From positions 1,054,001-1,118,000 of the forward strand of contig CM074823.1 of NCBI GenBank assembly GCA_037447605.1: a stretch of 64,000 nucleotides of DNA, read 5' to 3'. Below, piece by piece: positions 6,882 through 52,800 of this stretch (position 1 is the stretch's first letter; each line of letters starts with the position of its first letter). The stretch is from Zygnema circumcarinatum SAG 698-1b (taxonomy: Eukaryota > Plantae > Zygnematophyceae). A program made the translations under genes and the position numbers. The notes under the pieces are model-generated. The model did not search any database and was not told where the DNA came from. It saw only the letters and a program-made list of their open reading frames with translations.

Positions 6882-9800
6882 ATGGCGCGAGGAGGCACTT
6901 TCACCTTAAGCCTTTTCTTCGCCCTCTGTTCAGTGGTGCTTTCGGCGGCGGCCAAAAAGGACCTCTGCGCTCCGTTCGTGAACACGAATGAGACGACGTT
7001 CTCGGCTGACGTCGTGCGGAGTTGCTTCGGTCAGATTCCGTACAATGCTGACGTGGCGGCGAGCATGGTGGACTCCCTGAAGAAGGCGCTCGCCTTCATG
7101 CCGAGCGTCGACGTGGCGCTGAACTCTCCCACGAAGGAGCTCCCCCTCAAGGTCGACATTCGGAAGACCCTCACCGACATCGGCAAGAAGCAGTACAAGA
7201 GCGACCTGGAATTCAACAATGCGCTGCGTACTGCTTTCGATTCCCTGCGCGACCAGAACGTGGGGTACACGTCCTACTGTTACCCCTTCACCTCCGAGAT
7301 CGCGTTTCCGCTCGTTCTCTTCTGGAAGGACGGGCAGCCCGTCGTGCAGATCCGCCCGTCGTACAGTGAGCGCCGCCCCATCCCCTTCTTGCTCGCAGAT
7401 GTTTTGGCAATCTTGCCTTCTCAGGGTTTGGAAGTCGAAAAAAAATTGACATTCTAGAGTCTCGGTTTGGGTTGGATGTGTCCTGCTTTCCTTTTCATGA
7501 ATTGGAAGGGAGTCCTCGTATATAAATGCCATTCCTATCTCCTTTGGCTTTCGGAAGCTAGTCTCTTTCTCCCATTCCCTCTCTCTCCCTCTCACTCTCT
7601 ACTATAACCTCACATACACATGTCGACAGTTGTTATGATTTTTTTTCGTGCATGGCGGTTCTCAACATGCATGCATTCATGCTCATGTTGTTGTTGTCGT
7701 TGTTATTCATGCTCATGTTGTTGTTGTTGTTCATGTTGTTCTTGCTTTGCAGGCTCCCCGTCCGTGTACAACAAGACCTCGCTGAAGCTGAAGAAGGATC
7801 TGAGCCTCTTCGAATCCGCCGCGGTGGAGACCATCGAAGGCGTGCCCGCGTACGACTACCTTTTGTCCTTTGCGAACACGACGCAGGGCGGCTTCAAGGA
7901 CGTCAACGCGCGCCTCAACTCTCTCTTTGTCCGCCCGACCAATCTGTTCTCACAATCCGACGTATACCCATTTTACAGTGGAGGCTTTTCCTCTCGTCCT
8001 TATCTTGTGGAGAATGCCACGTTATCCATGCAAATCAGGAGGTGAGTACAAATTTTAATACGGTGATAGGGAGTGGAGCTAAAAGAAACAAATTGTCAGT
8101 GGCTTTTATAGAAATTGCGTGAGTTAAGTTTGAGCCGTACATATATTTGACAGGAAAGGGAGTTGGTTGAAGCTCTGTTACAATTTTTTGATGAAGTATG
8201 TACTTTCGAGCCCTTGACTTCCGTCAAGCAAATGCACGATACAAGCACTTTCCTCTTTTCGGTTCTTTGTTCTGTCATCACTCCTCAACTCCATACTGAA
8301 CGCTCATTGCGAGGTTGTTCTGCTGCCGTTATTCTGCTGCAGAGTGGGGCAAGCCAAGTCGGAGAAGCTCTCAGCTCCGTGGTACACAACTTTTCCTTAC
8401 GGTCCAATCTTCGACGATATCACGAGTTACTATAGATATAACTGCATCAACTCTCAGTTTTATGGTGGAGATTACGATTCTTCTAAAAGCTTATCGGATC
8501 GAAAGAGTGTATTCGACGATTCCTCTCGACAGCCAGAAGCGGACCCAATGGCAGGCTCCCAGCAGCCGGCTCTGACTGCAAAGAGCAAGAGCATGACTGG
8601 TGCTGAGCAACTCGTTGATGGAGTTGTTAGTGTAAGTGACCCCATTATATTGTTTCTATCCATGCATATCGATTGCTATGGATCTCCGTCTCTCCCTCTC
8701 CATTCGCCCTTCTCTTATTCTCTTACCATTCTTTCGCTATTTCTCCTCGTACCGACTGAAAACGTTCTTTCGTTGGATTCCCCACCTCCTTAATCTGAAT
8801 CTTTCTGGCTGTTACCCAGTGCTTCCCCTCCAGTCCCTCACCGTCTCCACCCCGCCACTTATCATATCTCTCTCTCACACACCTGCACTATTCGCCTGCC
8901 TTCTGATGCCCTACCCTCTCCCTCTATCTGTGTCCCTCGAACAATCCAAGGGTGTGCGCGCTGTGGCATAGTCCAATGCAATCCTCGCAAAACGATACAC
9001 GATTTTCTTACATGTACTCGTTTGAATGTGATGTCTGTGCATGCAGGCATGGCTTCTGCCGGACAACAAAACAGGAGTCCTTGTTATACCCGATTTCGGG
9101 CGGCGTACCTATTTCGATGAGTGGTACCCGAGCCTTGTTCTGAGCTTGGTCACATTGAAGTAAGCGTTTCGATTCTCCCCTTGTCCAATTGGCACTGTAA
9201 ACAGGTTTTTCAGCATGGCACATTTGACGTGATTGCATTGTCTAGTCACTCTATTACCCATCAATTCCAGAGAGCACAGAATTCGTATATGTCTCAAGCC
9301 AATGAAACCCTAACTCCATCTATTTGACGTACGTCCAGACGAGCTGCGAATCAAATCATCATCGACGTGGCTGACGCATCCGGCGGGTATTCGAGTCGAG
9401 TTGACGATCTCATTCAGTTCTTGTTCCCCTCTCTCACTTTCACTGCGTATCCGAGCGAGTTCAGAGCGACACGTCTCGCCAAACTAACTGTGAAGGCCGC
9501 CGTGAACGCAAACAAAACATACGGCTTATACGACTACAGTGCATATAGCGACTTGAATGGCCTGCCACTGACAGAGAAGAACTTCTTCTTTCCAGTCGTA
9601 TCTAAGACCTTCAACGGGAAGAAGGCGGATTATTCGAAGCAGTTGACTGTGTTCTATAAGTCCAATATTTTTCAGCCATCCAACCTAAAACCGCTTTTCA
9701 AGGCTGACGATATTCTTATCCTCACCAATGGCTTGTGCTACGAGAGGTGCGCGGAATTCATCTTCAAGGCGCAGGTACGTTGATCCCTTTATGTAGATCA

Positions 9801-49838: not shown

Positions 49839-52800
49839 TCAAGCAAAGTACTGCGCCGCCTTCGCCCAGGTGGCAGGCCTGTCCAGGACCGTCTCGGCCG
49901 CGTGGTCAAAGCGGTAATTCGCGGCCTTGAAGACGAAGTCCGCGGGAATCGCAGAGCTCGCCTTGCAGTACGACTGGAGGATGGGGAAGGTAAAGCTGGC
50001 GATGACAGGAAGAGGCGGAGGGGCGTCCTTGTCAGTGAGTAAGTTGACGTCAATTAACTCAAACCTGAGGGAGTCGATGTTATAGTTGAGGCCAACGACG
50101 CCTCCTCCGACGGCCATCGGCTTTTGGGGAATACCTCCCACAGCGACACTTTTCACTCCCGTAAATTCCTGCATACAAAGCTTGAGAAAATGAGGCATGG
50201 AGTTGAAAACAGAGCACAAGAGCGAGGGGAAGGAGAGAGAGGGAGGCAGAGGAAGGGGGAGACGGAAGGCAGAAAAGGGAGATGGCAAAGATCTACATGA
50301 AGGGATGAACATACCTGCAACTTGAAGATGAACTCCGCACAGTTGTCGTTGCACAAACCATTGGTGAGGATGATGATTTCGTTAGCCTTGAAAAGCGGTT
50401 TCCCAATGGACGGCTGGGAAATTTGAGACTTCGCGAAATACGTCAACTGCTTCGAATAATCCGCCTTCTTCCCGTTGAAGGTCTTCGATACGACCGGAAA
50501 GAAGAAGGTATCATTTGTGAATGGCAGGCCATTTAGGTCGGTCCAGATACGGTAGTCAAAGATGCTGCCAGATGTATAGTTGAGCTCCGAAACGGCTTCA
50601 GCAGTTAGTTTGGCGAGACGTGTCGCTCTGAACTCGCTCGGATACGCAGTGAAAGTGAGAGAGGGGAACAAGAACTGAATGAGATCGTCGGCGAGACCCG
50701 GATACCCGCCGGCATTATCAGTCACGTCGATGATGATTCGATTCACAACTCGTCTGAACAACAACAAGTACATCGGGATAGGGTTAAGGTTAGGGTAAGG
50801 ATTAGGGTGAGGGTTAGGGTTAGGGTTAGGGTTAGGGTTAGGGTTAGGGTTAGGGTTAGGGTTGGTGAGGGTGAGGGTGAGGGTGAGGGTGAGGGTGAGG
50901 GTTAGGGTTAGGGTGAGGATTCGTCGTGCTCTCCGTAACCGAAGGAAAGGAATGTTGGACAAGAGACGATGCTTTCATCATAATTTGAATGCGCCATGTG
51001 AAAGGAAGTAAGATTTCACAATTGAAATTGGACATAAAGAGGATGAAAATTGGCTTACTTCAAAGCGATCAAGCTTAGAACAACGCTCCGGTACCACTCA
51101 AAGTAAATGACATCCCCCCCAAAGCTGGGCATAACGAGAACTCCGGTTTTGTTATCCGGAAGCAGCCATGCCTGCATCCATAAAACAGGACATTTTCCAG
51201 GAGTTCATGTAAAAATCGTTCGTGCATAAGATTTTTATTTCAGTAGACGTTGAACAACGGCAGAAAAAGCTCTATGGGCGATACGGAGAGCAGAAGACGG
51301 ATGAACCAGGAAGGATTGGCTTCTACAGAGTGCGAGTGTGGAAAAAATTAAGGGAATAGAAGAGGAAAAGAATACTGGGAGAGGGCACAAGGGGGAATAT
51401 CGCAAAAGACTTAAAATGAAGCAAGATTGAGAGACGGGGAAGGTAGGATTTTTGTCGGCAATAGGTCAAGAAGCGAAAGAAAAACAAGGGAAAATGGAGA
51501 GTGGAGAGAGAGATAGAGAGAGGAGAGAGAGAGAGAGAGAGAGAGAGAGAGAGAGAGAGAGGAGAGAGAGAGAGGAGAGAGAGAGATTCTCATAACGGGC
51601 AAGCGTGAATAGAAAGCAAAGCAGCAGTGTTGCTTACAGTGATGAATCCGTCAGAGAGGAGCTGAGCACCATCCAATTTTGTGCTTGTTGGGGCCACGGC
51701 AGACTGAAGGGGTTCAGACATTCCTTCGGCTTCTGGCAGTCGAGAGCGATCTTCGAATACACTCTTTCTCTCCGAAAGGGTTTTAGGAGAGGAGGGAGGT
51801 TCATAAGGCTCATCATAAGTGTAAGTAGCATTGCAGCTCCTCGCGTAGTAACTCTTCAGATCGTCGAAGTATAAACCGTACTGGAAAGTGGTGTACCACG
51901 GAGCTGATAGCTTTTCGGAATTCCTCTGCCCCACTCTGCAGTATAATGCCAACACAACAATTTTAGGGTTTTAAGGGTTTTTAGAGTTTTCATGATCGTG
52001 CAGATAGATTTTTTTTTTTTTTTTTTTTTTTTTAGGGTTTCTAGAGTCTTTAGGGTTTTTATGCATTCTAACGATTGACGGATGTTGAAAACCAAGCACG
52101 AATCAATGCGCCTGTGAACTATGTATGCATCATTTAAGCTTGAACCCAATGGATGCAAATTCGGAGAACCTCTCACAATCCCTTTATGTTGTGTGCCAAA
52201 TTCAAGTTAAACTCTACCTCTTTATTTGCATGGATATCGTGGCACTATCCACGAGATAAGGGCGAGAGGAGAAGGCTCCGCTTAAGGGCGTGGTGGAAAA
52301 AGAATAGCGATCTGAAAAGCGATTGGTCGGACGGGCAAAGAGGGAGTTGAGGCGCGCGTTGACGTCCTTGAAGCCGCCCTGCGTCGTGTTCGCAAAGGAC
52401 AAAAGGTAGTCGTACGCGGGCACGCCTTCGATGGTCTCCACCGCGGCGGATTCGAAGAGGCTCAGATCCTTCTTCAGCTTCAGCGAAGTCTTGTTGTACA
52501 CGGACGGGGAGCCTGCAAGGCGACAACAGCAACAACAACATGAGCATGAATAAAAACAACAACAACAACAACATGCGCATGAATAACAACGACAACAACA
52601 ACATGAGCATGAATAACAACAACAACAACAAGGGTATGGATGTATGCAGGTTGAGAACCGTGATGCACCAACAACAATCACCACAACGTAGTCTCAAGCA
52701 AGACTTGGGGACATGTGTGTGTGTGAGGGCAAGAGGGAGAGAGAGGGAGAGAGAGAGAGGGAGAGAGAGAGAGAGAGAGAGAGAAATATAGCAAAATATT

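What the first reader, a model, noticed from the sequence alone, without database searches (positions are those of the whole stretch)
7935..52330. Antibody-like layout: near-invariant framework with five Tyr/Asp/Ser-rich hypervariable segments
Seen: long stretches are essentially identical at nucleotide level across copies 1,2,3,5,6,7,8 (e.g. [43 protein letters not shown]; also [34 protein letters not shown] in copies 1,3,6,7,8, where exon 1 is complete). Variation is concentrated in short windows. V1 (exon 2): SQSDVY / SEYDSDRY / LEYYTDEY / SQYYVY / SDRYSFST. V2 (exon 3): [28 protein letters not shown] / IQDGLDFDTLTHYYDFYCVNSEYYDGPY / FQYGLYFNDLQDYYAYYCNNSRYYSSG. V3 (exon 4): FGRRTYFDE / FGQRIYLEE / FGKVSNSYD / FGGDVIYFE. 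V4 lies in exon 5 around YDY. V5 (exon 6): LKYNIDSLRFDLYYYK / [16 protein letters not shown] / SSYYLYSLLSDLSSYD / ISYELSSLWFDLYFHD. Indels in these windows preserve the frame. Known: Tyr/Ser/Asp enrichment is typical of binding paratopes. Inference: diversifying selection on one ligand-binding surface, as in immunity, self/non-self or mate recognition.
Basis: partly seen in the sequence, partly recalled or inferred. Interest (0 to 1): 0.88.

Follow-up and report, generated by a model that had tools for sequence, protein, structure and literature searches.

The report
Dead-protease array with shuffled tyrosine patches
An alga close to land plants carries eight neighbouring copies of a probably secreted, enzymatically dead protease gene whose bodies are kept almost identical by gene conversion while tyrosine-rich surface patches diverge and are swapped between copies, a known way to evolve recognition proteins here seen on a new scaffold, with the bound partner unknown.

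Summary
The layout is real. Eight copies of a six-exon gene (six intact, one probably intact, one broken) encode ~650-aa fungal-type S41/CPAF-fold proteins with all three catalytic residues replaced. All five introns appear in RNA contigs, and DNA depth supports about 7-8 copies. Half of the 'antibody-like' contrast comes from gene conversion: frameworks are far more alike than introns (even in copy 8, whose middle introns are ~50% diverged), are GC3-rich, and the variable patches are reshuffled among copies (recombination p=0.001). Tyr is strongly enriched in the patches (22% vs 4%), Asp weakly, Ser not. Diversifying selection is moderately supported: dN 0.37 vs dS 0.18 vs introns 0.10-0.17; p 0.01-0.02 against neutral loops for six young copies, 0.17-0.20 with copy 8. 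Only V2 and V5 exceed intron divergence, and PAML-type tests are inflated here. Patches map to family-variable surface elements; V3 and V5 flank the old substrate groove by topology, but 3D clustering was not computed. No somatic machinery was seen. Best reading: secreted pseudo-enzyme binders or decoys under biotic pressure; ligand unknown. The scan noted this cluster's dead catalytic site before, and single S41 genes elsewhere in this genome.

The parts
6882..10244 (+). copy 1, intact, 646 aa; exons 6882-7365, 7753-8041, 8343-8631, 9047-9159, 9339-9774, 9915-10244
   Evidence: GT-AG introns, open frame; copy-1-only variants in RNA run X2
11133..13384 (+). copy 2, broken: lacks exon 1 and half of exon 2, gap in exon 5, foreign letters after the gap, AA acceptor before exon 6; exon 6 region differs from copy 3 at only 4 of 423 letters
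15714..19084 (+). copy 3, intact, 648 aa; exons 15714-16197, 16572-16866, 17169-17457, 17870-17982, 18180-18615, 18755-19084
   Evidence: exon 2 hits PDZ_CPAF_rel E 9e-9; copy-3-only variants in both RNA runs
20971..26258 (+). copy 4, intact, 649 aa, old paralogue outside the conversion pool (dS about 1.4), also catalytically dead and Tyr-rich at the same patches
27496..30627 (-). copy 5; 5' part of exon 1 lost in the gap at 30628; an extra base near 30494 shifts the frame in the assembly but is absent from all listed contigs of four runs; V2 transcribed
39122..42551 (-). copy 6, intact, 645 aa
43247..46615 (-). copy 7, intact, 648 aa
49839..53507 (-). copy 8, intact, 652 aa; introns 2-4 are 39-55% diverged from the others, yet exon 1, early exon 2 and late exon 6 are near-identical
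7056..7937 (+). homogenised framework 1 in copy 1 (helical domain and PDZ; spans intron 1); coding difference 3% among all seven pool copies
7257..7259 (+). former catalytic His position (Asn; Leu in copy 6)
   Evidence: alignment with homologues
7950..7967 (+). V1 in copy 1: hairpin loop late in the PDZ domain
8392..8478 (+). V2 in copy 1: loop and helix after the PDZ, running into a disordered linker; strongest patch
9095..9121 (+). V3 in copy 1: loop after the IPDF strand of the protease core
9511..9549 (+). V4 in copy 1: loop after an inserted helix; dN 0.19, dS 0 among six copies
9742..9744 (+). former catalytic Ser position (Glu; Asp in copy 8)
9993..10040 (+). V5 in copy 1: strand and helix right after the GGG motif (cap region)
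10050..10103 (+). extra variable patch after V5, present as two alternating blocks (copies 1,2,3,7 vs 5,6,8)
10104..10229 (+). homogenised C-terminal framework in copy 1 (1% difference among seven copies, GC3 0.85-0.9); holds the former catalytic Glu (Asp, 10143-10145)

Best explanation
A tandem and inverted array of secreted pseudo-proteases used as binding proteins. SHOWN: the genes are spliced and transcribed; they are colinear homologues of fungal-type S41/CPAF-fold proteins; His, Ser and Glu of the triad and the oxyanion motif are replaced in every readable copy; gene conversion homogenises parts of the coding sequence and swaps the variable patches between copies; the patches are Tyr-rich. 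SUPPORTED, NOT PROVEN: amino-acid change in the patches (mainly V2, V5) is faster than neutral. INFERRED: the protein is secreted, keeps the groove between cap, core and PDZ, and uses the Tyr-rich patches around it to bind foreign proteins (for example secreted enzymes or effectors of microbes living on the alga), as inhibitor, decoy or opsonin-like coat. Diversity arises in the germ line by duplication, selected point change and conversion, not somatically.
For: Family and fold. Triad loss versus at least 90% retention of His and Ser in 54 homologues. Splicing of all five introns and 7-8x single-copy DNA depth on frameworks. Conversion: near-pair incompatibility test p=0.001, nearest neighbour changes at every patch; copy 8 introns ~50% diverged but framework 1-3%; 24% of 30-nt coding windows but under 1% of intron windows differ by 2% or less; GC3 falls with synonymous divergence, rho -0.6, and not in copy 4. 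Selection: V dN 0.37, dS 0.18, ratio 2.0 (bootstrap 1.07-3.3) versus introns 0.10-0.165; harsh neutral-loop null p 0.01-0.02; V2 exceeds every intron window, V5 lies in the top 1-2.5%. Tyr 22% versus 2-10% at the same columns in homologues. Purifying selection on old copy 4 (dN/dS 0.25-0.33 against full copies). The substrate-binding strand of CtpB lies in the cap (PMC3808539), where V5 starts by my topological mapping.
Against: No ligand, localisation or induction data. With copy 8 included the rule-based test is not significant (p 0.17-0.20). Cross-validated ratios range 0.8-1.8. Site-model LRTs are inflated under a no-selection null (observed 48 vs null 15-40; observed 17.6 vs null 0-16.8). 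V1, V3, V4 lie within the intron band. The patches are the family's indel-tolerant loops anyway. 3D clustering was not computed, and the model is of a 28% identical homologue. The signal peptide rests on hydropathy and alignment only.
Confidence: 0.5

Rival explanations
1. Binding proteins for a non-immune ligand: abundant wall or mucilage proteins that bind polysaccharides, glycoproteins or small molecules (IRBP-like co-option), or whose Tyr serve for cross-linking or sulfation; paralogues subdivide ligands.
For: Aromatic residues suit sugar stacking (general knowledge); IRBP is an S41 that lost its Ser and became a carrier (PMC10120077); transcripts present in two ordinary RNA data sets; 6-8 N-glycosylation sequons.
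Against: Stable self ligands do not usually drive dN above intron rates or block-swapping of patches.
Confidence: 0.2
2. Contrast artefact: surface loops are simply relaxed, and frameworks look invariant because conversion keeps resetting the best-matching tracts. No positive selection.
For: V1, V3, V4 within the intron band; patches are low-conservation loops across the family; LRT inflation under the null; p 0.17-0.20 with copy 8; windows chosen after the fact.
Against: V2 and V5 exceed introns; dS in V matches introns while dN is about twice that; p 0.01-0.02 against a fully neutral V in six copies; the truly disordered linker has dN/dS 0.75 and no Tyr bias; relaxation does not explain a fivefold Tyr excess.
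Confidence: 0.17
3. Self/non-self or mate recognition factor for conjugation or filament adhesion.
For: Secreted, variable, in a probable conjugating alga; Zygnema mating factors are unknown and Closterium pheromone homologues were not found there (PMC11096116).
Against: The variation seen is between paralogues of one genome; all 40 listed read variants match window paralogues, so no allelic polymorphism was seen; no mating-type data.
Confidence: 0.08
4. Assembly artefact: identical frameworks are collapsed consensus, and V variants are misjoined.
For: Five small gaps; copy 2 exon 6 nearly equals copy 3; a likely one-base error in copy 5.
Against: Two DNA runs show 7-8x depth on frameworks and copy-specific contigs with no differences; RNA contigs carry copy-specific V2 and spliced V1-V2 linkage; frameworks still differ by 1-3%.
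Confidence: 0.03
5. Somatic, antibody-like diversification, with copy 2 as a donor cassette.
For: A broken copy shares V5 with an intact one; block-swapped patches.
Against: No read variant outside the window's copies among those listed; no signal sequences or cassette layout; germ-line conversion suffices.
Confidence: 0.02

Closest known systems
Fungal-type S41 proteins (PF23658 + PF03572; AvrStb9 of Zymoseptoria tritici; S41 expansion of Batrachochytrium)
   Same: Same colinear architecture and CPAF-like fold; AvrStb9 shows positive selection at residues close in 3D (PMC10208482); B. dendrobatidis has 32-34 recent copies (PMC5567314).
   Different: Here in a plant-lineage alga, triad lost in all copies, diversity among tandem paralogues with conversion, Tyr-rich patches.
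Chlamydia CPAF and CtpB/Prc C-terminal processing proteases
   Same: Top structural matches of the homologue model (3dor E 9e-14); PDZ, cap and core.
   Different: Active enzymes; about 12% identity.
IRBP (vertebrate retinoid-binding protein)
   Same: S41 fold that lost its catalytic Ser and became a secreted binder (PMC10120077).
   Different: Different S41 branch, internal domain repeats, conserved, small-molecule ligand.
Phytophthora glucanase inhibitor proteins (GIP); from memory also plant XEGIP/TAXI and scabies SMIPP-S
   Same: Secreted, catalytically dead protease paralogues acting in host-microbe conflict (GIP: PMC3091767).
   Different: Trypsin or pepsin folds; their targets are known, none is here.
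Conversion-shaped recognition arrays (tomato Cf-4/9, MHC, red/green opsins)
   Same: Homogenised tracts with local peaks of divergence kept by selection (PMC3924837); sequence exchange makes new combinations.
   Different: In opsins the introns are homogenised; here exon frameworks are more alike than introns; the scaffold is a dead protease.
Antibodies / CDR loops
   Same: Conserved frame, Tyr-rich variable patches.
   Different: No Ig fold, no sign of somatic rearrangement or mutation, seven or eight genomic variants only; Ser not enriched.

Membership tests
S41 / CPAF-like (fungal type) | CPAF-like PDZ domain | tested here: met
   PF23658 E 9e-9, 35.8 bits above cut-off 27
S41 / CPAF-like (fungal type) | Full-length colinear homology to S41 proteins | tested here: met
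   27-29% identity to P0006, P0035, P0049, which hit PF03572; window exon 5 alone only E 0.15
S41 / CPAF-like (fungal type) | CPAF fold | tested here: inconclusive
   met for homologue P0006 (pLDDT 88; Foldseek CPAF E 9e-14); the window's own joined protein was not folded
active S41 peptidase | Catalytic His, Ser, Glu and NxGG oxyanion motif | tested here: not met
   His to Asn/Leu, Ser to Glu/Asp, Glu to Asp, motif altered
conversion-shaped multigene array | Intragenic exchange among paralogues | tested here: met
   p=0.001, changing neighbours; copy 8 contrast
conversion-shaped multigene array | Local divergence peaks above the neutral level | tested here: met
   V2 and V5 only
diversifying recognition protein | dN/dS above 1 in the variable patches | tested here: inconclusive
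   2.0 (1.07-3.3); p 0.01-0.02 in six copies, 0.17-0.20 in seven; site LRT borderline
diversifying recognition protein | Variable patches form one surface | not testable with these tools
   no coordinates returned; ordered surface elements in the homologue; topology only
diversifying recognition protein | Allelic polymorphism in populations | tested here: inconclusive
   none among 40 listed variants in 4 runs, probably related culture strains; 272 rows not shown
pseudo-enzyme inhibitor/decoy (GIP, XEGIP type) | Secreted and catalytically dead | tested here: inconclusive
   dead site met; N-terminal hydrophobic stretch and no other membrane segment by hydropathy, no SignalP run
pseudo-enzyme inhibitor/decoy (GIP, XEGIP type) | Binds and blocks a microbial protein | not testable with these tools
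   needs an experiment
antibody-type adaptive system | Somatic diversification | tested here: inconclusive
   no novel variants among listed contig differences; contigs drop rare variants
antibody-type adaptive system | Immunoglobulin fold with CDR loops | tested here: not met
   S41/PDZ architecture

The most novel reading that the evidence does not exclude
Probability: 0.3. Interest if true: 0.8.

Novelty: new variant of a known kind. Interest (0 to 1): 0.57.

Why it matters
How algae close to land plants recognise microbes or mates outside the cell is largely unknown. This is a compact, expressed, testable candidate: seven or eight natural variants of one scaffold that differ in defined patches. 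It would add the S41 fold to the dead-enzyme scaffolds recruited for recognition. It is also a clean case showing that conversion can create much of a 'framework plus hypervariable' look and inflate standard PAML tests.

Tried and rejected
Single-tree M2a/M8 tests (2dL 135) were rejected as evidence: the statistic fell to 48, 17-20 and 10 with 60-, 30- and 20-codon local trees and no-selection simulations gave up to 40 and 16.8. No close relatives: best exon-1 hit E 5e-16 among 1.8 billion representatives; exon-5 profile blank (sees only proteins of similar length); two metagenome scans blank. No paper links S41 with Zygnematophyceae in the held library; the CPAF structure paper was not found, so CPAF residue details rest on memory. 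Ser enrichment rejected, Asp not significant. Assembly collapse and somatic diversification judged unlikely. As the operators asked, spliced models were searched exon by exon by reference; joined proteins were built only inside scripts for alignment and rate estimates and were not sent to any search or folding tool, so the joined search and fold were left out and a homologue (P0006) was folded instead.
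Full report
Anatomy. A self-comparison shows eight copies of one six-exon gene between 6882 and 53507: four on the + strand, then four on the - strand. 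Copies 1, 3, 4, 6, 7 and 8 have GT-AG introns and open frames of 645-652 aa. Copy 2 lacks its 5' half, is cut by the gap at 12824, resumes in about 170 unrelated letters that hold a primer-binding-site-like word (not beyond chance), and has an AA acceptor before exon 6; it is broken, and the two sides of the gap are not continuous. Copy 5 loses about 270 letters of exon 1 in the gap at 30628 and has one extra base near 30494 that is missing from every listed contig of four runs, so it is probably an assembly error. The other three gaps are intronic or intergenic. Contigs of two runs cover exons almost only and join across all five introns, four of them at the predicted places; two DNA runs show about 7-8 times single-copy depth on shared tracts and perfect copy-5-specific pieces. 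All 40 listed variants are letters of other window copies, including ones unique to copies 1 and 3 in RNA. The array is real and transcribed; depth was not used to rank genes.

Identity. Exon 2 hits the CPAF-like PDZ family. An exon-1 profile found 142 distant homologues, none close. The best full-length ones are colinear at 27-29% identity, carry PF03572 and PF23658, and include a Netrium digitus protein. In a quick tree the window copies form a long-stemmed clade with P0006 and P0049, next to the Netrium protein. The host is therefore most likely a zygnematophyte alga; Zygnema circumcarinatum would fit the genome size (PMC11096116) but this is my guess, not a tool result. A model of P0006 (pLDDT 88) matches CPAF best and fungal and amoebozoan S41-like clusters. 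His and Ser are kept in at least 90% of 54 homologues; in the window His is Asn or Leu, Ser is Glu or Asp, Glu is Asp, and the oxyanion motif is changed. These are pseudo-proteases, still under purifying selection (copy 4 against full copies dN/dS 0.25-0.33).

The observation. The quoted strings are there. Half of the highly variable columns lie in the 13% of columns called V1-V5; more variable zones exist. Tyr is 21.8% in V against 3.8% elsewhere, significant in each copy and in copy 4, which was not used to define V; Asp is weak and Ser absent as a signal. Homologues have only 2-10% Tyr in these columns, though the columns are the family's least conserved, most gap-rich loops.

Why the framework is invariant. 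Synonymous sites are invariant too. Introns of the six young copies differ by 9-15% and introns 2-4 of copy 8 by 39-55%, yet copy 8 differs by 3% in the first framework and 1% at the C-terminus. A quarter of 30-nt coding windows but under 1% of intron windows are within 2%. A recombination test gives p=0.001, and each patch has other nearest neighbours: V1 c1=c7 and c3~c5, early V2 c3~c5, late V2 c2~c6 and c1~c5, V3 c1~c3, V5 c2=c3, the patch after V5 c5~c8. Homogenised tracts are GC3-rich (rho -0.6; nine to zero GC gains against copy 4 at the C-terminus), as expected from GC-biased conversion. So conversion resets the frame and reshuffles the patches.

Is there selection? Pooled pairwise estimates for six copies give dN 0.37 and dS 0.18 in V (ratio 2.0, bootstrap 1.07-3.3), against dS 0.05-0.12 in frameworks, 0.10-0.165 in introns, and a ratio of 0.75 in the disordered linker. 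Choosing windows in one set of copies and measuring in another gives 1.1-1.8 within the young copies and 0.8-1.0 when chosen from distant ones. Against simulations with local trees, the rule-picked ratio is extreme; against a harsher null with V fully neutral, p is 0.01-0.02 for six copies and 0.17-0.20 for seven. Model-free, V2 exceeds every intron window and V5 lies in the top 1-2.5%, while V1, V3 and V4 do not stand out. Such local peaks under conversion are a described sign of selection (PMC3924837). I put selection on at least V2 and V5 at about 0.75.

Where the patches sit. In the homologue model V1 is a hairpin late in the PDZ, V2 a loop and helix after the PDZ ending at a disordered linker, V3 the loop after the first core strand, V4 a loop after an inserted helix, V5 a strand and helix after the GGG motif; most are ordered. 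V3 aligns with the loop after the ISTF strand of CtpB. In CtpB the substrate pairs with a cap strand that carries the catalytic Lys, in a tunnel between cap and core that opens to the PDZ (PMC3808539); by motif order V5 begins on the equivalent strand. That the patches ring the groove is thus an inference from topology; no coordinates were available to compute it.

How it most likely works. A secreted, glycosylated dead protease keeps its groove as a binding site; Tyr-rich patches set specificity; duplication, selected substitution and conversion make a small germ-line repertoire. The pace and the block-swapping point to a changing partner, most simply microbial proteins (0.5). Rivals: non-immune wall or carrier function (0.2), relaxed loops only (0.17), mate or self recognition (0.08), artefact (0.03), somatic system (0.02). 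An LRR-EGF gene inside the array shows four near-identical LRR exons that differ at the concave-face residues, which fits a recognition neighbourhood but proves nothing.

Comparison and novelty. S41 proteins under positive selection (AvrStb9, PMC10208482), expanded (PMC5567314) or dead and co-opted (IRBP, PMC10120077) are known, as are dead-protease inhibitors in host-microbe conflict (GIP, PMC3091767) and conversion-shaped arrays. I found no description of a diversifying dead-S41 array in algae. It is a new variant of a known kind, not an antibody-like system. Interest 0.57.

Noticed in passing
window 33100-36835, - strand: LRR gene with signal-like N-terminus and an EGF-like segment (weak Pfam EGF_2) inside the array; four 72-nt LRR exons at 36085, 35885, 35686, 35489 are near-identical except at concave-face residues.
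   Followed up: partly
window 12834-13005: About 170 letters unique in the window, inserted in or before intron 5 of copy 2, with a word like a reversed tRNA-Met primer-binding site at 12936; possibly the end of a retroelement.
   Followed up: partly
window 5201-5674 and 48757-49040: The gaps at 5437 and 48922 are each flanked by inverted repeats (229 letters at 94%; 88 letters at 92%): MITE-like elements or assembly fold-backs.
   Followed up: partly
window 6050-6400, 13850-14560, 30710-31030, 42640-42880, 47900-47990, 53870-54150: Upstream regions of the copies share blocks with repeated CCAAT words, followed by long CT microsatellites before the ATG; copy 5's promoter lies beyond its gap.
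   Followed up: partly
window 1709-1852: Last exon of a kinase that reads like a MAP3K (MEKK-type C-terminus), left neighbour of the array.
   Followed up: no
window 55586-56620, - strand: Last exons of an ankyrin-repeat gene (ARF-GAP-like ending), right neighbour of the array.
   Followed up: no
P0023, P0039: Two distant homologues also lack the catalytic Ser, outside the algal clade in the tree: dead S41s arose more than once.
   Followed up: no
window 24660-25560: About 900-letter TATC microsatellite in intron 5 of copy 4; telomere-like AAACCCT runs in several introns.
   Followed up: no
V1, V2, V4 of several copies: Many Tyr sit beside Asp or Glu (DY-type words), the context of plant tyrosine sulfation (from memory); untested.
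   Followed up: no
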